DNA of 63,975 nucleotides, filler included, from Octopus bimaculoides (lineage: Eukaryota), in the NCBI RefSeq assembly GCF_001194135.2. It is 6 parts of 5 records of this genome, joined end to end, with 100 filler letters (N's around TTAATTAATTAA, not from the genome) between each part and the next. Parts side by side here need not be neighbours in the genome. Positions count along the whole stretch, not along the records: positions 48,337 to 59,514 come from NC_068982.1; 5 more parts are not named here. One strand, written 5' to 3'. Under the pieces are notes generated by a model. It saw only the letters and a program-made list of their open reading frames with translations. It was not told the origin of the DNA and ran no database searches. Numbering within the stretch: the stretch's first letter is position 1; every line of letters begins with the position of its first letter. This document shows positions 3,566 through 59,514 of this stretch, piece after piece. A program made the position numbers and the translations under genes.

Positions 3566-4750
3566 ATCTTTATAGTTGTCATGTATTCTATCAGAGAACA
3601 TCGTCGGGTACTGGCTTAAAACTTTGAAACGCTTAGATAAATTCCGAAACATCATAACTTTAGGCATAATTACTCACTTATGAAAATATCTTGTGAGTGA
3701 AATAAAAATCTCATGTATGAAGACTAGAACTTTCATAGACGAAATGCTGTTTTTATACTTATTCTATGGATGCAGCGTGGTCAAATGGTTGGAATTTTTG
3801 CCTTGCAAATACACTCGGTATCTTAGGCGAGTATTTTTCATCATAGCCTCGGGTTGACTCAAGTTTTGCGAAGGAAAGTGGGTAAACGGTAGCTACTGAA
3901 TATGTTAATAACTGAAGCAGATAAACGTTAGGAAATGTTCTCTATGCTTGTTGTTGTTGTTGTTGTCGTCGTCGTTGTTGTTGTTGTTGCTGTTGTTGTT
4001 GTTAGTTGCTAGTCAGCCATGATTCAAAGAGGTGGAACCAGTGATGTTCAAGTTGTGACCATCCTTATTTCTCAGGTTGTGTTTATCTATAGCTATCTAA
4101 TACGCCCTTTCCTTTTTAGGGTAGTAGAGTGTGCTTTGAGGGAGATTTGATTAATATTTCTTGGAGACGAAATGACTTAGAAGAGGCTTACATATTGGCT
4201 AGTATTTCAATGTATACGTTGTTAATAAAACATCTATTCTGATCCTGTGAATGTTATTAATTTTGTTCATTGTTATTTCAAACTATCTATGAACTTCAGA
4301 TTATATCGAACAAATTTGCATGGATAAGTTCTAGAAACCATATTTATGGCAATAATAGGAGGTTATTAAAAACTGTATAAAGCATCATATCCAAGTACGA
4401 AATGAAAATGAAAATGAAAATGAAAATGAAAAAGATATACCGAGAAAACAAAATTCATTTGAATTCCAAGGCTTCTTTCCAAATAATACCTTTAATATGA
4501 ACTGCTGCTTATTGTTGGGAATACTATTCATAAACGATAATCTATAAAATCTAAATGCAGTTAAATCTTTGCAGTAATATATATTTTAATTACTTCTCTT
4601 AAGCTGGTGAAATCACCACGGTGTAACCCTAACCCTTTTAAAAGCATGAGTTATGTTGAAGAGCTAAGCGATATATTTATCCCACGTCTCCATTTTTAAT
4701 AGCACTTATTTTACATATGTACGCTCACGCACTCGCGAGCACTCGCGCGC

Positions 4751-4851
<101 letters not shown>

Positions 4852-5309
4852 TAACCACCCTCCACAGGTACTCACACATGCACAGGCATACATAAACATA
4901 TAAAATATTATTATAATATTAAGCTATAGAAAGAAGGAGAGAAAAAGAAAGCATTATGTTATAGAGAATTGACGTTGAATCATGGAAATTAACGTAGATA
5001 CTTAAGAAATTGAGTTGACTAGAGGCCACATCCGTGATTAGCCGGACGCTTTTCAAGGGTCAGATATAACCTAGTGTAAAGGTCGCAAGCTGGTGCGTTT
5101 TTTTTCTGGTTTCAATTGACTCAGAATAATGACAAATTGCCTCGTTTATTAAAAATGAGACTGTTCTTAGCACCCTTTAAGCAGTTGGTGAATAACTTTA
5201 AAATAATTTCGGTGTGGGTGATAAAATATCACCAGTTGTCATAGTTATTTTAATCGCTTGTTTAAGCACTGTTTCGCATTATTTCTGCCAGAAACTTATG
5301 TACGTAGAA

Positions 5310-5500
5310 GATATTTATTTCAAATTTTGGAAATTGGCCAGCAATTTTAGGGAGAGGGGCAAATCGATTACATCGATCTCAATACTTGACTGATATTTTA
5401 TTTTATCGACTCCGAAAGGGTGAAAGACAACGTTGACAATGGCGGAATTTTAACTCGGAACGGAAAGAGCTGGAGTGAATACCGCATTTTATACTTAGAA
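5310..5500 (-). mobile_element. Decayed SINE of the TAA-tailed family (Nin/Deu-like central domain)
   Basis: ATCGACTCCGAAAGGGTGAAAGACAACGTTGAC is the reverse complement of the GCCTTTCATCCTTTCGGGGTCGAT core seen at 16831-17825. Confidence 0.6.
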
Positions 5501-5759
5501 AATACTGAACATTCTGTATAGTTTCTTTTATAGAAATGATGCAAAAATTGTTTATTTGCGTCATTAAACCTACACATTTTTCAGTGTCATTATACATATC
5601 TTTTAGAATATTCTTATCCTGTGTTTTAATCTACTTCTATGTAAACGGCTGCAATGTTTCCTTTTATCTAATAAATCATACCCGATTAGACGTCAAGATG
5701 TCGATCAACATAAGTGCCGTTAATAGAGGTTTCTACAATAGGTAAAAATACAGCAGTAC

Positions 5760-5992
5760 TGAGGGGAAGGAGTTACACGACACCAGCAGCCTCAATATAT
5801 GACTAGTACTTTATGTCATCGACCCTGAAAGGATAAAAGGCAAAGTTGATTCTGCCAGAATTTGAACAGAACCGCAACAAACACTGCAAGATATTTTGTT
5901 TTGATTCTCTAACGATTATGTCAGAATTGTTAGCACGCCAGACGAAATTCTTAGCGGCATTTCGTCTGTCCGTACGTTCTGAGTTCGAATGT
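5760..5992. mobile_element. Two head-to-head SINE fragments of the TAA-tailed family (5760-5920 minus, 5921-5992 plus)
   Basis: ATCGACCCTGAAAGGATAAAAGGCAAAGT (minus core) is followed directly by GTTAGCACGCCAGACGAAATTCTTAGCGGCATTTCG (plus head). Confidence 0.65.
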
Positions 5993-6714
5993 TTATTATC
6001 ATGTTTATTTGACTATATACTTGCACGAGATCATCTATTTATGAGTCGCACATTTGTATTTAAAAAAACGCATTTAAATTCAGATAGCGATAGATTTCGA
6101 ACTGAGAAAATTCGCACGTAATTAACAGCTCCTTATGCTCTGATAACACCAATGCACTTTGTTTTGCATTTTATTTTTGTCCTGGGAGAAAACATGTAAA
6201 GCTAGATTAATGATGTCCACAAAAAGAAGTAAACTCGATTGCTAACACAAACACTACTCAAAATAAGCTAGCAGTATGAAAAGTCATGGTAGACTACAAC
6301 TGGTTAGACAAAACGAAGTGATAAGATGATGCAGATAGCTGGACCATAACAGTTCAGAAAAGAAAGCCGAAGAGAAAGAGCGATTCACTTCTGATATGAC
6401 AACTCGTGAGTATACTTATGGATAATAATAACTGATATTGATGGGTATACTATTATGCTCCCGAGCTTTATTTTCCTTGAGGTGAAAGTCAAATCTAGGA
6501 CTAGTGGGAAATATAAACAGACAGTCAACCTTCTGCTGCAACGATCGTAGTATCAGGAATGTGCACGACAGGGAAGTACCGTTACTTTTATAAGGGCACA
6601 AGGAGTGAGTTGCGATGCTGCGTCTTTCATCGAAGTGCTGTCGGTGTCTGGGAAAGGAAGTTTTAGCCTAGCCGTACTATTGTCGTCATCGGGGCTCATC
6701 TTTGGGAGGAACAC

Positions 6715-48354: not shown

Positions 48355-48475
48355 AGATTTGTATGTGTACCCCTGTGTTTGTCTCCTGTCATTGCTTGAC
48401 AACCGATGCAGGTGTGTTTATGTCCCTGTAACTTAACAGTTCAGCAAAAGAGACTGATAGAATGTCTGCTTACAA
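48355..48475 (+). mobile_element. OR2-like SINE fragment, CpG-decayed
   Basis: TTGCTTGACAACCGATGCAGGTGTGTTTATGTCCCTGTAACTTAACAGTTCAGCAAAAGAGAC. Confidence 0.7.
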
Positions 48476-49513
48476 ATACATCACACTGAGATATGAGGAT
48501 CTGTTGGTAATTGAATAAATCTCATGCAAAATAATTGAGGAAATGTTAGCAACAGACATTTTTTTAAATATTATAGGAAAAAACTATTAATAAAATGATT
48601 TTCATGATTTATCATGAGTTGGCAGGTCTTAGCATGAATCAACAAACAGTTTGTTCACTGAAATTATAAACAACACCAGTTTTTATCAGATCCATTGGTC
48701 TAGGTACTTCTGACAACACACGACCTGTCAAAAAGCCTAGTGTCCTAGAACCCCTTACTCTAATGAGTCTACTGTGTTATGAACATGTATTCATTGTAAA
48801 GGAGAAGCTGTACTCCTGTGTCAAATGCAACAGTTACTGGCACATTCATGTTCAAATCAGCCTTGCATATGACAAGATATTCATCAATTGTAGGTATCTA
48901 CAATGTAAAAGCTGATATGAAAATAATATTAAGGTTCTGGTGAGTGTGAAGTGTATATGTGGGCACAGAGAATCAAGCATGTGTCTCACTTCTTGGTTTA
49001 CATCTATTATTTGCAGAGAAGACCTGCATCTGTATTATATGCAGGGAAGACCTGCCAGAAGGCATGTGATGTGTTACAAAAGAGTGATGTATGAATGAAT
49101 ATAGACGAGTTGTGTAGATTGGATGTGGTGGGAGACAACCAGTGCTGATAATTATAATGAATAATATGAATTCCTATAGTTATTTGAAAACAGTTGTTGA
49201 TCAGATGTAATAAAGCAATGGGACTTCTTAATAGAGAAAATATGATGTCATTCTTTCATGGGGAAAAAGTCTAAATATTTAATGATTCACAATAACTCAG
49301 AGAACTGACAACAGGAATACAAAAGCGGAGAAGCCATGTAACAAAGACCAGTTAAAAATAGTTTGGAGTGTATGTGTTGATTATAACTTAGTTGACCTAC
49401 TTTCTCACAAGTTTCTAAATGCTGTTGTGTCATAACAATTTACTAAAAAATGTCACTGAAGTATTTATTCTCTAATACAATATATATATATTAACTAATA
49501 TTAACTAAGTATA

Positions 49514-51695: not shown

Positions 51696-51937
51696 TGATG
51701 GTATTGGTGGTGATAATGATGAAGATACAGTTACATTCTTCTGAAATAATCTCATCTATTTCTAATTTTCTTCTAAAAAAAATAATAAAATGCTGCACCA
51801 AACTATTTTTTTCTTATATATATATATATATATNNNNNNNNNNNNNNNNNNNNNNNNNNNNNNNNNNNNNNNNNNNNNNNNNNNNNNNNNNNNNNNNNNN
51901 NNNNNNNNNTACATATATATATATATGTATATATATA

Positions 51938-52899: not shown

Positions 52900-53020
52900 C
52901 AAGCTGGATCACAGGTAACCTGTGTAGGTGATCAATCACTCTATCAGCTGGTTTTCTCTGTTGCCATGTGTGCAAGAGGAAGCAGACCAATATGGAAATA
53001 TGGACATAAAATAATGATGA
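52900..53020 (+). mobile_element. RTE-type 3' tail remnant
   Basis: CCAATATGGAAATATGGACATAAAATAATGATGATGAT matches the tail at 57264-57290. Confidence 0.5.
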
Positions 53021-53712
53021 TGATAATCTGTAATGTCACAGTGGAAATCAGTAGTGGTGACTTAGCACATTTAGAAACTTTGGGGGCTTTAGTTGTGGAT
53101 TGTTTTAATAAATAAGGAGGGTGTAGTGTCTTGTTGTGTAAAGATTCTATTTTAGTGAAAGTCGTCACATCTTCATTGAAGATGGTTTTGAGATTTCTTT
53201 TCATGGAGGTTGTGAAAATATGGTGTGAAGCTTCCAAGTGGCTGACACCTATGTGCTCATAGTTAAGAGGAGTGATAAGTGAAAACATTTCCATAAGAGT
53301 ATGTGTGATTAGAAGTAACAAAAAGTAGGTCACTCAGAGTGTGGGAAACATGGCCAAACCTTGTGATACACTAGACTTAATAAAATGTAGGTCAAAGTAA
53401 GCTCTGCCAGCACAAGGTGCATTAGAGCAGTCTGAAAGGAAATTTTCTACTCAAGAGATAAGATAGAAGCACTCCAAGGATGTATGCTTGGAGAGGGCTA
53501 GGTGAGTACTGCACACCTACTCTGTTCTTGTAGGGTTAAACATAATCTGGTCACAGTTTGTATACATGCCAGCTGAAACTGTTAGAATCACTGCTGTTAG
53601 AGCAGCCTAGATAAACTACTACACTCAAGTATTATATTGAGCACTTTTCTCCTGTTTGTTAAAAGATAACAAATGTGTGTGTGTGTGTGCGTACGTGCGT
53701 GCGTATGTGTGT

Positions 53713-53915: not shown

Positions 53916-54038
53916 ACTAAAGGGATATATATATATGATTCAATAATAGGATAAAGTCTTTATAAGAATTTATCAAGTAGTTAGCGTGAAAAACCTCATA
54001 AGGGAAAAAAACCCATCATTTATCCCTATAAATATATT

Positions 54039-54301
54039 TAATTTATATAAGGGCATTACTATACAATAACGCCTCACGCTAAGAGGGACTCCAGAAGTCA
54101 AACTACTATAATAAACACATTTTTACAGATCGCGAGGGAATGGAACTCTCAAAGCTAACCTCCTAAAAACTTTTACGGAGGTTTGCTTTGAGAGTTGCAT
54201 TCCCTCGCGATCGGTAAAAATGTGTTTATTATAGTAGTTTGACTTCTGGAGTCCCTCTTAGCGTGAGGCGTTTTTGTATAGTAATGCCCTTATATAAATT
54301 A
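54039..54301. mobile_element. 263-bp near-perfect palindrome (fold-back MITE candidate) in TA context
   Basis: The arms pair around centre 54170 with 4 mismatches over about 125 bp plus 2 near the centre. Confidence 0.9.
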
Positions 54302-54639
54302 TATATATATATATATATATATTGACAAAAGTCGCTATCTACATGCTGTTGATATATTGTCCGCTTGATTCACACCTTCAATAATCCAATTCTTTCCTAA
54401 ATGCTTTGAAAACAATATACTCTTCAAACAGTCCTCTAATGTACATCATGCTGATAAAAGAAAGAAAATATTATTAAGCAAGCATAGCTACACACAAAAA
54501 TCCTATCTCAAAATACCACCAAAGCATACAGGAAGACTAACATTGATATAAGCACAAAAGTGAAGGACATAGCCACTCCTGAAAATAGACAATTGTGTGA
54601 ATTTCCTCAACATATGGCTCTCTATTTCACTTCATGGAC

Positions 54640-55448
54640 CATAATGATTTCAATGAAGAATTTAACATACCAGTAGGGCTCTGTTATTGACCTTTACTAT
54701 TTATTATAATTTCCAGGCTATAACAGAGGAATTCAAGATTGCCTGTATGTATGCTGATGACCTACTTTTCAGTGCTGAATTAGTCAAAGATTTAGAAAAT
54801 TCAAAATGCAGAAGCAAATCTTAGAATCAAGCAACCTCAAAGTAAACCTAACAAAGACAAAATTTTTAGTTGGCAGAGAAGACAGGACTCTACTGCCATC
54901 TGGGAAATGACCATGCTCATTAGGCAGAAAATGAGTGGGTAGGAATTCCATATGCTGGACCCAATATAAACAGTAGGATCACAAGCAAACTGAGAGAGTA
55001 GAAACTTTATATGTTTAGAAACTTTATATGTTTAGAAACTTTATATGCAGTAAAAGTACCTGTCAAAAATTTTTTCAGAGTTGGTAAGTAGCTTTTTTTA
55101 CCTGGCAGTGGAGGAAGATATTTCAAAAATATAGTAGCCTGAGTAAGAAGCAAGTATAAAAATTTCAGCGAGTTTTTACCACTGCTGTCAACAAAAGGTT
55201 CTTCCCTCCAAATGAAAAAAAGATTGTATGACACTTGGGTGTATAGTATGGTATTGCATGGTAGCAAACTATGGAAACTGAATGCAGAGCATGTGCAAAG
55301 ACTGGAAAGAAATTAAGTGAGCATGTTCTGCTGGATACTTAATATTAATGTACATGAACAACAGAGTACAAATGAGCTGAGAGGAAAACTGAATATAAAT
55401 GGAATTAGATGTAATATACAAGAGAGAAAACCATGATGGTGCCAGCAT
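54640..55448 (+). mobile_element. Decayed RTE LINE, left part (RT YADD to pre-RWYGH)
   Basis: Pieces read MYADDL, NLKVNLTKTK, RLYDTWVYSMVLHGSKLWKL and QERKP*WCQH. Confidence 0.8.
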
Positions 55449-57056
55449 CAAACAGGCACTCCATCAGTTATTTATATATTAATACGCTTGTACCATCGGG
55501 GTTTGTCACACTAAGGGAGATAAGTCTGGATGATTAAATTTGAGCTATTTCCCTGGCTTCTGGATTGGCATTGTTGCAACACTCTTGAAAAGGTGGTAAA
55601 ACTCTTCACAGTACATTCAAGCTTCCAGTTCCTTTGAGTGAAACAAAGTGTATGCAATGTTCCACCAAATTCTGATCAAGGAAACATTCTTAGCTGAGTA
55701 AAAGTCTTCTTTATTGACGAAGCTTCAATGATAGTAGTTTATGCTTTGAAAGCTATAGATTGTTTAAGAGATATTATGAATAGTAATAGTATATTTAATG
55801 GGAAAATTATCATACTAGGCGGAGATTTTAGACAAGTGCTTCCAGTTGTTTCCAGAGCTCCTCCTGCAGCTGTACTTGATGCCTGCTTCAAATGCTCCTC
55901 TGTGTGGGATAATTTTCACCAAATGCAACTTATTTAAAACATGAGAATAACAATGCAAATGAACAAGATTTTGATACTACAACTTGGATGTGGATTTCTT
56001 CAAAGCTCTCTGGATAATCTTGCAGAAGATACTATTGATATTCCTGAGGCATGCATATGTAACAATTCTTTGGTATCTGGTATATTTGACAATTGTACAG
56101 TAGAAGAAATAAAAAACAGAGTGATCTAATCCCCTAAAAATTCGGATTGCTTAGCAGTAAATAAAGAAATTTTAAGTAGCTTGCCCACTGAAGTACTTCA
56201 GCTCCACAAGCATAGCATCGAAGCATCAATTATAAGTGGATCTCATTATCACACAAGAGTATTGATTCCAAGAATCAAACTTATTCCATGCGATGCAAAC
56301 ATTCCATTCATTCTGCATCAGACCCAGTTCCCAGTTCATTTGTCCTATTCTATGACAATCAATAAAGCACAGGGACAAACATTTGATAGATTTGGCATAC
56401 ACTTGCCACAGCCATGCTTCACTCATGGCCAGCTTTATGTAGCTTTTTCAAGAGCAAAGGCAATGAACAGTGTGAGGGTTAAAGGGATACCTCAAAATGA
56501 ATCCACACATGGTCGCAGAAGGGGAATCACCTACACTAGAAACATTGTATATATAGGGAAGTGCTGTAACAGATGTACTTAACATATACTTTCACACAGT
56601 AACTTAATATATACTTATATTATTAATAAATATAACAAAGTATAATAGAATTTTCCATTAACCAAAATAGTGCAAATTAAACAATTTTAATTAAATGATA
56701 ACTATTCATCAAACGATATTTAAATTATCCATAAATTTTTTCACAGGTCCTGCTAGTGACAATGAATGTTTCAGTTGATCTGATCAATGGAACAGCTTGC
56801 TCATGAAATTAACATGCAAGTGGCTGAACACTCAACAAACTCACAGGCTCTTAACATAGTTCTCAGGGAAATACAGCAGGACACAGAATGTGACAAGGTT
56901 GGCTCTCTGAATTACAGGTACAACTTAATTTTGCCAGCTGAGTAGACTAGAGCAACATGAATTAAAGTGTCTGGTTCAAAGACACAAAACACCCCCAGGA
57001 ATCATGACCTTCCAATTGTGAATCAAATACCTTGACCACTAAGTCACGTGCCTTCG
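55449..57056 (-). mobile_element. tRNA-derived SINE (58777 family) split by a Helitron: head/body 57056-56757, tail 55470-55449
   Basis: Joining 55470 to 56757 restores GATCAACTGAAAC...GTCATAACTGATGGAGTGCC. It is flanked by a 12-bp TSD, TGGTGCCAGCAT (55437-55448) and TGGTACCAGCAT (57057-57068). Confidence 0.88.
55471..56756 (+). mobile_element. Internally deleted Helitron carrying PIF1-type helicase C-terminal pseudogene
   Basis: Starts TTTATATAT (variant of TCTATATAT), ends CTAG, and sits between A and T with no TSD. It encodes GKTLHSTFKLP, FIDEASM, GKIIILGGDFRQVLPVV, QFPVHLSYSMTINKAQGQT and FTHGQLYVAFSR. Confidence 0.92.
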
Positions 57057-57300
57057 TGGTACCAGCATATGATGAATATGGAGGATGACAGTTGGCTAAG
57101 CTGGAAGTCAAGAGATCCAAACAGGAGGAACGTGCGGAAATAGAAGACCAGAAAGGACATGAGAAGTGGTGAAAGCTGATTTCAAGAGGCTGAACTTCAG
57201 AGATGACAAAGTGCTAAGACATGTGGCAAAATGTCTTGCTAGTGAAGACCTACCTATCCTATCCAAGCATGGAAAAATGGACATAAAATGAAATTTTACC
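57057..57300 (+). mobile_element. RTE LINE right part and 3' tail
   Basis: WYQHMMNMEDDSW continues the left piece, then EVVKADFKRLN and the tail CCAAGCATGGAAAAATGGACATAAAATGA. Confidence 0.82.
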
Positions 57301-58241
57301 ATACAAGAATAAATAAAGGGAGTGACAGTTTTGTCAGCAGCCCAAATGTCTTCATACATGAGTATCAAGAATCAATACTGCAAACATCAAAGATACAACT
57401 TTATAACTGTCTTCCGAAAAGGCTGAGGAATTTAAATGATTAAAGTTGCTTATGAATGTGTGTATACACATGTAAGAATGTTTGTATGTAAACACACACC
57501 TATCAAAAACCAGTGAAGATATAAATTGGTGTAAATTATACAGCAAAAGATGTACTTTTTTTTTATTCCACATATACTATCTGCAGTGGATTATATATAA
57601 GCTGGATAGAACAGCTTCTACTGACTCTCTGGTGATACTAAACACATAAAACTGAATTCTATGATATACAGCAGAGGTAACACAAGAAACAAAGAAGTTT
57701 TCTCATTACTAATCTTGCATGTGGAGAATAAGTAGAAATTACAGCAACTATCAAATTGCCTGTCAGGAGCTTAAATTTAATGGTTCTAGCACTCACTTTG
57801 ACTACCTTAACTGTATACCCAACTACTTCATTGCTAAAAATATACCTGCCCCATCAGTATCAGAATTATTAAGTATCTAGAATTTAAATTTATGCTTTTT
57901 TTCTTCTGATCAATCAAACAATTACAATTCTTCAGCTTATTTCCAGGAGTCATTACAGTTCAATCTTTCTAAATTCTAACATCTTAACCTTGCAGACTCT
58001 TCTGATTATAGTAACACGCACACACACACACACACACACACATTTAAGGAAGATAAATAAAACCAATAAAATAATTACTTGCTTAAAAAATATATCTGAA
58101 GTTTGATATCAGGCATGTTTTTCTTCTTTTTATACAATTCCTTATCGTAATTGTATCTATTCATTATTTACTCATTTACTTCTGAAACACTTTTTTTCCT
58201 TTAACAGAAATGTTCTGTTTTTTTGTTTTTTTTTCTTCCAG

Positions 58242-58776: not shown

Positions 58777-59147
58777 GGAGGCGCAATGGCCCAGTGGTTA
58801 CGGCAGCGGACTCGCAGTCATAGGATCGCGGTTTCAATTCCCAGACCGGGCGTTGTGAGTGTTTATTGAGCGAAAACACCTAAAGCTCCACGAGGCTCCA
58901 GCAGGAGATGGTGGCGAACCCTGCTGTACTCTTTCACCACAACTTTCTCTTACTCTTACTTCCTGCTTCTGATGTGCCTGTAATTCAAAGGGTCACACTG
59001 TGTCACGCTGAATATCCCCGAGAACTACGTTAAGAGTACACGTGTCTGTGGAGTGCTCAGCCACTTGCGCGTTAATTTCACGAGCAGGCTGTTCCGTTGA
59101 TCGGATCAACTGGAACCTTTGACGTCATAAGCGACGGAGTGCCAACA
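58777..59147 (+). mobile_element. Full-length tRNA-derived SINE with CpGs intact
   Basis: A box TGGCCCAGTGG, B box GGTTTCAATTCCC, and 3' end GATCAACTGGAAC...GACGGAGTGCC. Confidence 0.88.
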
Positions 59148-59291: not shown

Positions 59292-59514
59292 TCATCATCA
59301 TCGTTTAACGTCCGCTTTCCATGCTAGCATGGGTTGGACGATTTGACTGAGGACTGGTGAAACCGGATGGCAACACCAGGCTCCAGTCTGATTTGGCAGA
59401 GTTTCTACAGCTGGATGCCCTTCCTAACGCCAACCACTCAGAGAGTGTAGTGGGTGCTTTTACGTGTCACCCGCACGAAAACGGCCACGCTCGAAATGGT
59501 GTCTTTTATGTGCC
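59292..59514 (-). mobile_element. (GAT)n-tailed SINE with RTE-like 3' end
   Basis: Reverse strand GGTTGGCGTTAGGAAGGGCATCCAGC...CCCATGCTAGCATGGAAAGCGGACGTTAAACGATGATGATG; homologous to 60550 and 61117. Confidence 0.88.

What the first reader, a model, noticed from the sequence alone, without database searches (positions are those of the whole stretch)
54640..57300. Triple nesting resolved to the base: Helitron inside SINE inside RTE LINE
Seen: removing 55471-56756 rejoins CCATCAGTTA|TGACAATG into a continuous SINE 3' end that matches the intact copy at 58777-59147. Removing the SINE (55449-57056) leaves a 12-bp TSD (TGGTGCCAGCAT/TGGTACCAGCAT) and restores the RTE motif W(C/Y)QH-MMNMEDD. Known: Helitrons insert at A|T with no TSD and end in CTAG, while LINE-mobilised SINEs create TSDs. 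Inference: the order is RTE, then SINE, then Helitron. This defines exact termini of a Helitron that a repeat masker would probably call only a PIF1 fragment.
Basis: partly seen in the sequence, partly recalled or inferred. Interest (0 to 1): 0.7.

Follow-up and report, generated by a model that had tools for sequence, protein, structure and literature searches.

The report
Helitron inside SINE inside LINE, octopus

Summary

- **Helitron excision.** Cutting out 55471-56756 rejoins a minus-strand SINE. There is no gap at the junction against the related SINE at 58777-59147.
- **SINE excision.** Cutting out 55449-57056 leaves one copy of an 11/12 target-site duplication (chance about 0.006). It restores a LINE reading frame that aligns ungapped to a better-kept paralogue (WCQH|MMNMEDDS against WYGHVMHMSEDS).
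- **Helitron ends.** The 1286-bp insert carries a PIF1 helicase remnant. Two paralogous copies fetched from Octopus bimaculoides and O. sinensis start at the same base, and the O. bimaculoides copy also ends at the same base. All flanks are unrelated.
- **Helitron hallmarks.** The paralogues start A|TC. The window copy starts TT (C>T) and ends CTAG|T. A 9-bp subterminal hairpin is intact in the O. bimaculoides copy and eroded in the window at CpG sites.
- **What kind of Helitron.** The family is a deletion derivative: an 88-bp leader, then helicase residues 90-492, with no Rep and no Walker A. The window copy has lost a further 198 bp.
- **The outer LINE.** Its relatives have an RTE-like build: one EN+RT(+PHD) ORF of about 900 aa, then a (TGA)n tail at the stop codon. 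I did not place the clade by phylogeny.

Helitrons, RTEs and SINEs are all documented in octopus. Interest is low.

The parts
54643..55448 (+). Outer LINE, 5'-truncated. It holds the RT core from the YADD box onward, a decayed PHD-like Cys/His stretch, and the C-terminal domain up to WCQH. It has many stops and frameshifts, plus a 17-bp x 2.9 tandem repeat at 54999-55047.
   Evidence: The local DNA alignment to the L001 LINE starts at 54643. tblastn of the stitched frame maps to 54661-55448.
55437..55448 (.). Left copy of the SINE target-site duplication, TGGTGCCAGCAT (codons W C Q H of the LINE).
55449..55470 (-). 3' end of the inner SINE. It comprises a 6-nt private tail (rc TGTTTG) and the last 16 nt of the shared 3' module, cut off from the rest by the Helitron.
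55471..56756 (+). Non-autonomous Helitron copy, 1286 bp. It lies between host A (55470) and host T (56757) with no TSD.
   Evidence: The ends are shared with L002 (both ends) and L001 (5' end) at 85-88% identity with unrelated flanks.
55471..55560 (+). Helitron 5' terminal leader, about 88-90 bp, non-coding. It begins TTTATATATTAATACGC. The paralogues begin TCTATATATCAATACGC and TCTCCATATTATTACAC.
   Evidence: Helicase homology starts 88 bp into the L002 copy.
55561..56582 (+). PIF1-type helicase remnant, corresponding to residues ~90-492 of an intact 493-aa relative. There is no Walker A and no Rep. It has frameshifts and stops. A 198-bp deletion at 56189/56190 (GAA microhomology) removes residues ~303-366, including most of the 2B domain.
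   Evidence: Pfam PIF1 E=1.5e-24, profile positions 67-192 of 223. tblastn against the L003 ORF. Alignment A1 columns 762-959.
56727..56756 (+). Helitron 3' terminus: an eroded subterminal hairpin (ATCCATAAA-TTTT-TTCACAGGT) followed by CCTGCTAG.
   Evidence: The homologous L002 segment folds as a 9-bp stem with a 4-nt loop, -5.3 kcal/mol, z=-3.2. The window differs from it at CpG>CA/TG positions. The inferred ancestor folds at -8.5 kcal/mol. The related element L005 has hairpin + CTCGCTAG|T.
56757..57056 (-). Body and tRNA-like head of the inner SINE. Total SINE length is 322 nt once the Helitron is removed.
   Evidence: The Rfam tRNA model matches full length (1-71) at 56979-57053 on the minus strand, at 21 bits and E=0.016 in a local search, which is below the gathering score of 29.
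57057..57068 (.). Right copy of the SINE target-site duplication, TGGTACCAGCAT.
57069..57292 (+). Outer LINE, 3' part: MMNMEDDS...GRPRKTW-like C-terminus, ending near ATGGAAAAATGGACATAAAATGA.
   Evidence: tblastn and DNA alignment run to 57260. The 21-mer at 57269-57289 recurs at 52992-53012, where (ATG)n follows it.
58777..59147 (+). Young comparator SINE (CpG observed/expected 0.92). It has a different tRNA-like head and the same 3' module. Its probable 8-bp TSD is TGTTCAAA.
   Evidence: The TSD was read by eye.

Best explanation
Three transposition events are stacked at one spot in an octopus-type genome.

1. A LINE with RTE-like architecture inserted first, as a 5'-truncated copy, and then decayed.
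2. A 322-nt tRNA-derived SINE was later reverse-transcribed into the LINE's C-terminal coding region on the opposite strand. This duplicated 12 bp of target.
3. A 1.3-1.5 kb non-autonomous Helitron then integrated between an A and a T in the SINE's 3' module. It made no target duplication, as rolling-circle Helitrons do.

The Helitron is a deletion derivative: an 88-bp 5' end, the C-terminal four fifths of the PIF1 helicase, about 175 bp of 3' UTR, a hairpin, and CTAG. It cannot have moved itself. It must have been mobilised in trans by an autonomous RepHel element that recognises the same ends.

What is shown: the boundaries, the collinear empty sites, the shared termini in other copies, and the domain content. 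What is inferred: trans-mobilisation, the absolute ages, and the RTE clade.
For: - **SINE empty site.** It is collinear and ungapped.
- **LINE empty site.** It is collinear at protein level and at DNA level, where exactly one TSD copy fits best. TSD chance is about 0.006.
- **Helitron content and ends.** The insert has a PIF1 domain. The closest named proteins are from Octopus sinensis and O. bimaculoides. Paralogous copies on CM046607.1 and CM016859.1 share the 5' end to the base, and one shares the 3' end, all with unrelated AT-rich flanks, a|TC...TAG|t.
- **3' hairpin.** It is intact in L002 and eroded in the window at CpG sites. A related element has the same hairpin+CTAG|T layout.
- **Loss of autonomy.** The family lacks helicase residues 1-89 and any Rep.
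- **Age gradient.** CpG observed/expected is 0.09, then 0.14, then 0.23. Copy identities are about 58% for the LINE, about 80% for the SINE module and 85-88% for the Helitron. This fits a reported Helitron burst at JC 0.09 in O. vulgaris (PMC13282606).
- **SINE head.** It matches the tRNA model full length.
- **LINE relatives.** They have EN+RVT_1+PHD in one ORF of 880-921 aa with a (TGA)n tail at the stop codon. A second LINE 3' end in the piece is followed by (ATG)n.
Against: - The window copy starts TT rather than TC, and its hairpin no longer folds (-0.4 kcal/mol, no better than shuffles). Its Helitron hallmarks therefore rest partly on paralogues.
- Only one other copy confirms the 3' end, and that copy reads GTAG where the window reads CTAG.
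- No Rep-bearing autonomous partner with these ends was found.
- The tRNA match is below Rfam's gathering score, and ARAGORN found nothing.
- No second copy of this SINE's head was seen.
- No orthologous empty site from another individual or species could be examined.
- The RTE clade was not tested by phylogeny.
Confidence: 0.9

Rival explanations
1. The outer element is a LINE of another clade (L2, CR1 or similar), not RTE. The nesting itself is unchanged.
For: The RLRW-GH-V-RM and GRPRKTW C-terminal motifs occur, from my own knowledge, in several LINE clades. The decayed window copy hits no Pfam model and no database protein. A PHD finger after the RT is not a textbook RTE feature.
Against: Relatives have a single EN+RT ORF of about 2.8 kb, no called ORF1 upstream, and a stop codon that runs straight into a (TGA)n tail. 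This is the RTE pattern of Malik and Eickbush 1998, cited in PMC9115989. RTE-BovB types are greatly expanded in cephalopods (PMC10294476).
Confidence: 0.25
2. The Helitron entered a SINE source copy first, and the composite SINE+Helitron was then retrotransposed into the LINE. The inner two events would then be in the opposite order.
For: Nesting alone cannot formally exclude movement of a composite. No empty-site orthologue was available.
Against: From general knowledge, a Pol III SINE transcript would stop at the T-runs inside the Helitron (for example TTTTTT at 56741-56746). The two other Helitron copies sit in non-SINE flanks. CpG decay is deeper in the SINE than in the Helitron.
Confidence: 0.03
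3. The 1286-bp insert is not a transposed Helitron. It would be a PIF1 pseudogene fragment placed there by repair or recombination, with the A|T and CTAG features coincidental.
For: This copy lacks Rep, lacks the TC start and has no working hairpin.
Against: Copies in two other genomes, at unrelated loci, share the same first base. One shares the same last base, and both begin a|TC. A filler fragment would not recur with identical ends.
Confidence: 0.02

Closest known systems
Canonical (Helitron1-type) non-autonomous Helitrons of animals
   Same: The family starts 5' TC. The 3' end is CTAG, preceded by a short hairpin 8 nt upstream. Integration is between A and T with no target duplication. 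The helicase is PIF1-type. Copies at several loci share the same ends.
   Different: This family keeps most of the helicase ORF but has lost Rep and the Walker A motif. It is therefore a coding-remnant deletion derivative, not a short non-coding element. The window copy has TT for TC and an extra 198-bp deletion.
RTE-clade LINEs of cephalopods (for example RTE-2_OV, PMC9115989; RTE-BovB types, PMC10294476)
   Same: Relatives have a single EN+RT ORF of about 3 kb, almost no 3' UTR and a trinucleotide-repeat tail. The window copy is 5'-truncated.
   Different: Relatives carry a PHD finger after the RT. RTE-2_OV is described as 1109 aa, against 880-921 aa here. No direct sequence comparison or tree was made.
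tRNA-derived octopus and cephalopod SINEs (labelled OK, SepiaSINE and OegopsSINE by RepeatMasker in the supplement to PMC9115989)
   Same: The head is tRNA-like, with an A-box-like TGACTTAGTGG. The length is about 320 nt, there is a 12-bp TSD, and the 3' module is shared between families.
   Different: The family name was not established. The 3' end shows no similarity to the tail of the LINE it sits in, so its LINE partner is unknown.

Membership tests
Helitron (canonical) | 5' terminus TC, directly after a host A | tested here: met
   L002 reads a|TCTATATAT and L001 reads a|TCTCCATAT. The window copy reads a|TTTATATAT, a C>T change at base 2.
Helitron (canonical) | 3' terminus CTRR, directly before a host T | tested here: met
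   The window reads CTAG|t. L002 reads GTAG|t. The related L005 reads CTAG|t.
Helitron (canonical) | Subterminal hairpin a few nt upstream of the 3' end | tested here: met
   L002 has a 9-bp stem with a 4-nt loop, 8 nt before the end, at -5.3 kcal/mol and z=-3.2. In the window copy it is eroded (-0.4 kcal/mol) by CpG>CA/TG changes.
Helitron (canonical) | No target-site duplication; precise A|T empty site | tested here: met
   The excised site aligns ungapped to the related SINE (...CTTA|TGAC...).
Helitron (canonical) | RepHel protein (HUH Rep plus PIF1 helicase) | tested here: not met
   Only helicase residues ~90-492 are present, with no Rep and no Walker A. The element is therefore non-autonomous, which is compatible with membership as a non-autonomous Helitron.
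Helitron (canonical) | An autonomous partner with the same termini in the same genome | not testable with these tools
   No searchable octopus genome was on hand. A metagenome scan for the 5' leader found nothing.
tRNA-derived SINE | Pol III tRNA-like head at the 5' end | tested here: inconclusive
   The Rfam tRNA model matches full length at 56979-57053 (-), at 21 bits against a gathering score of 29, with E=0.016 locally. ARAGORN found nothing. An A-box-like TGACTTAGTGG is visible in the sequence.
tRNA-derived SINE | Flanking target-site duplication | tested here: met
   A 12-bp repeat matching at 11/12, abutting both ends. Chance is about 0.006.
tRNA-derived SINE | Repeated in the genome | tested here: inconclusive
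   The 3' module recurs at 58930-59143 at 79-81% identity. No second copy of this head was found in the 54 kb of octopus DNA from L001 and L002.
RTE-clade LINE | Single ORF with an N-terminal AP-type endonuclease and an RT; about 3.2 kb; no separate large ORF1 | tested here: met
   P0128 is 921 aa with Exo_endo_phos, RVT_1 and PHD. No ORF1 is called upstream in L007. The L001 copy spans about 3700-6260.
RTE-clade LINE | Very short 3' UTR ending in short tandem repeats rather than poly(A) | tested here: met
   In L007 the stop codon lies inside (TGA)n. The window's second LINE end at 52992-53012 is followed by (ATG)n. This copy keeps only AATGA.
RTE-clade LINE | RT domain groups with RTE in a phylogeny of LINE clades | not tested

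The most novel reading that the evidence does not exclude
The octopus Helitron family may have been exchanged horizontally with crustaceans. An intact 493-aa helicase ORF on a Tara Oceans contig (L003) is 89% identical to a mantis-shrimp (Oratosquilla oratoria) protein. It is also 75% identical to the already decayed O. bimaculoides copy. The same ORF is only 48% identical to a sea-urchin Helitron helicase. At nucleotide level, the window copy is 72-80% identical to L003 across the coding part.
Probability: 0.2. Interest if true: 0.35.

Novelty: already known. Interest (0 to 1): 0.12.

Why it matters
The practical value is small. The site gives base-exact ends and a relative age order for one octopus non-autonomous Helitron family. 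It could serve as a clean test case for repeat annotators, which often report such copies only as helicase fragments. It opens no new biological question. Nested TE insertions are routine, and Helitrons, RTE LINEs and tRNA SINEs are all documented in octopus genomes (PMC13282606, PMC9115989, PMC10294476).

Tried and rejected
- **Sequencing runs.** No reads could be laid, so no empty or filled alleles in other individuals could be sought.
- **Decayed LINE as a query.** The search for homologous proteins with the stitched, decayed window LINE found nothing. Pfam also gave nothing for it. A better paralogue from L001 had to be used instead.
- **Exhaustive protein search.** It was not used.
- **Metagenome scan.** A scan for the conserved 5' leader pattern found no contig.
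- **Exact-product look-ups.** Two window ORFs inside the Helitron were not on record.
- **tRNA detection.** ARAGORN found no tRNA in the piece. Rfam at piece scale gave no tRNA hit. A hit appeared only in a 111-nt local search, and none appeared for the young SINE head.
- **Rep domain.** I looked for Rep next to the related helicases on the short contigs L003, L004 and L006 and found only PIF1.
- **SINE and LINE tails.** By eye, the SINE tail has no similarity to the tail of this LINE, so I rejected the idea that this LINE mobilised it.
- **Shared 21-mer.** I considered whether the 21-mer shared by 52992-53012 and 57269-57289 was chance. I kept it as a second LINE 3' end because an (ATG)n tail follows it.

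Full report
**What is in the sequence**

The region 54400-57500 has three layers. The + strand of 54643-55448 and 57069-57292 reads as a decayed reverse-transcriptase C-terminus: a YADD box, a Cys/His stretch, and ...LERN......WCQH, then MMNMEDDS...VVKADFKRL. Between these two parts, on the minus strand, lies a 322-nt SINE split in two (55449-55470 and 56757-57056). Between the SINE halves, on the + strand, lies a 1286-bp segment that encodes a PIF1-type helicase remnant (Pfam PF05970, E=1.5e-24, profile positions 67-192 of 223).

**Checking the Helitron excision**

With 55471-56756 removed, the reverse complement of the joined flanks aligns to the + strand SINE at 58930-59143. The junction TTA|TGA sits inside a 146-nt block with no gap. 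A blastn of the rejoined SINE covers positions 163-316 at 79% identity, straight across the junction at 300/301. The repeat finder had flagged the same inverted homology without any prior hint (I2). So the insert added and removed nothing at its target, and it sits between an A and a T.

The two SINEs share only this 3' module. Their tRNA-like heads differ, so the comparator belongs to a related family and is not an intact copy of the same one.

**Checking the SINE excision**

The SINE is bounded by TGGTGCCAGCAT and TGGTACCAGCAT. A repeat this good within +-15 bp of two arbitrary points turns up in 0.7% of random trials in this piece.

The window's LINE is too decayed to hit anything directly. 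A better-preserved paralogue lay by chance in one of the fetched octopus loci (L001, about 3700-6260). The stitched window frame aligns to it at 50% identity over 110 aa (E=3e-28). The alignment runs ungapped across the restored junction: IQERKP*WCQH|MMNMEDDS against VQERRLCWYGHVMHMSEDS. At DNA level, keeping exactly one copy of the 12-mer scores better than keeping both or neither (282, 276 and 264).

The SINE head matches the Rfam tRNA model over its full length at 56979-57053 on the minus strand. This is 3 nt from the proposed 5' end. The score is sub-threshold (21 bits, E=0.016 in a 111-nt search). ARAGORN found nothing.

**Are the Helitron ends real?**

The closest named proteins to the helicase remnant come from Octopus sinensis and O. 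bimaculoides. I fetched the DNA around both. In both loci, nucleotide homology to the window starts at 55470/55468. In the O. bimaculoides locus it ends at 56757. Identity is 85-88%, and the flanks are completely unrelated.

The paralogues begin a|TCTATATATCAATACGC and a|TCTCCATATTATTACAC. The window copy has TT, a C>T change. The window ends CTAG|t, and the O. bimaculoides copy ends GTAG|t. The O. sinensis copy diverges before the 3' end, so it is uninformative there.

The last 30 nt of the O. bimaculoides copy fold into a 9-bp stem with a 4-nt loop, placed 8 nt before the end (-5.3 kcal/mol, z=-3.2). The window copy differs from it at exactly the positions expected from CpG decay (CG>CA, where the other copy has CG>TG) and no longer folds. 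The inferred ancestral 30-mer folds at -8.5 kcal/mol.

A more distant relative on a marine-metagenome contig (L005) shows the same layout: hairpin, 8 nt, CTAG, then T.

The single-base ambiguity (55471 and 56757 are both T) is settled by the A|TC starts of the paralogues.

**What kind of Helitron**

I compared the copies with an intact 493-aa helicase ORF (L003). The O. bimaculoides copy covers residues 90-492 at 75% identity, and this coverage begins 88 bp after the 5' terminus. All three copies share this join. The family is therefore an amplified deletion derivative with no Rep and no Walker A, and it must have been mobilised in trans. That last step is an inference.

The window copy alone lacks a further 198 bp at 56189/56190. 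The deletion is flanked by GAA microhomology and removes most of the 2B domain.

**The outer LINE**

Database relatives of the L001 paralogue are single ORFs of 880-921 aa with Exo_endo_phos, RVT_1 and a PHD finger, typically on contigs of about 3 kb. In one intact relative (L007) no ORF1 is called upstream, and the stop codon lies inside a (TGA)n tail.

A second LINE 3' end in the piece (52992-53012) shares a 21-mer with 57269-57289 and is followed by (ATG)n. A single EN+RT ORF of about 3 kb with a near-absent 3' UTR and a short-repeat tail is the RTE pattern (Malik and Eickbush 1998, cited in PMC9115989). RTE-BovB types are reported as greatly expanded in cephalopods (PMC10294476). I did not run an RT phylogeny. 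I hold 'RTE' at about 0.75.

**Order and age**

Nesting gives the order LINE, then SINE, then Helitron. CpG observed/expected rises in the same order: 0.09, 0.14 and 0.23, against 0.92 for the young SINE at 58777-59147. Copy-to-copy identity rises in the same order too: about 58%, about 80% and 85-88%. A pairwise identity of about 87% between Helitron copies fits the Helitron burst reported for O. vulgaris at JC distance 0.09 (PMC13282606).

The alternative that a SINE+Helitron composite was retrotransposed is unlikely. The Helitron holds T-runs that would stop Pol III, and the other Helitron copies are not in SINEs.

**Comparison with what is known, and verdict**

Helitrons, RTE LINEs and tRNA-derived SINEs are all documented in octopus genomes. 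A curated O. vulgaris library lists eight recently active Helitron families (PMC13282606). RepeatMasker tables for octopus transcripts already carry Helitron, RTE-BovB and cephalopod SINE labels. Nested insertions are routine in a genome that is about half or more repeats.

The novelty class is 'already known' and interest is low.

The one mildly unusual side observation is how close the octopus helicase is to a crustacean one. This could reflect horizontal transfer, which is a well-known Helitron habit. I did not pursue it beyond three pairwise comparisons.

**Limits**

No orthologous empty site and no genome-wide census of ends could be made. The 3' end is confirmed by one conspecific-family copy plus one distant relative, and the 5' end by two copies.

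Noticed in passing
L003 168-1649; P0013; L002 23186-24394: An intact 493-aa Helitron-type helicase on a Tara Oceans contig is 89% identical to a mantis-shrimp (Oratosquilla oratoria) protein. It is 75% identical to the decayed octopus copy, against 48% to a sea-urchin homologue. This may indicate Helitron exchange between crustaceans and cephalopods.
   Followed up: partly
window 54018-54322: A near-perfect 305-bp palindrome (two 152-nt arms, 92% complementary, 1 nt apart) ends in a (TA)n run just upstream of the LINE fragment. It draws sub-threshold miRNA-precursor hits in Rfam and looks like a foldback or MITE-type element.
   Followed up: no
window 52992-53027: A second LINE 3' end. It has the same 21-mer as 57269-57289 (20/21), followed by AATGATGATGATAAT, a trinucleotide tail of the kind seen in the intact relative L007.
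   Followed up: partly
window 54999-55047: A perfect 17-bp tandem repeat (2.9 copies of TAGAAACTTTATATGTT) lies inside the decayed LINE. It is a local duplication absent from the L001 paralogue.
   Followed up: no
window 58777-59147: A young SINE with almost undecayed CpG (observed/expected 0.92, 23 CpGs), a perfect A box TGGCCCAGTGG and a probable 8-bp TSD TGTTCAAA. Its first 84 nt match L002 839-923 at 87% identity.
   Followed up: partly
window 59292-59478; L001 8616-8790 and 6508-6692: Another repeat family, SINE-like and GC-rich, runs to the right edge of the piece. It has two copies in the O. sinensis locus at 79-81% identity.
   Followed up: no
window 48390-48476; L002 31670-31762: A short repeat at the left edge of the piece matches the O. 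bimaculoides locus at 85% identity over 93 nt. It is unclassified.
   Followed up: no
window 51834-51910: A run of N, presumably an assembly gap, flanked by (TA)n. It produces spurious inverted-repeat calls.
   Followed up: no
L001 10777-10850: The O. sinensis Helitron copy has a roughly 70-bp internal deletion after the helicase and then diverges from the family about 100 bp before the expected 3' end. It may be truncated or interrupted by another insertion.
   Followed up: no
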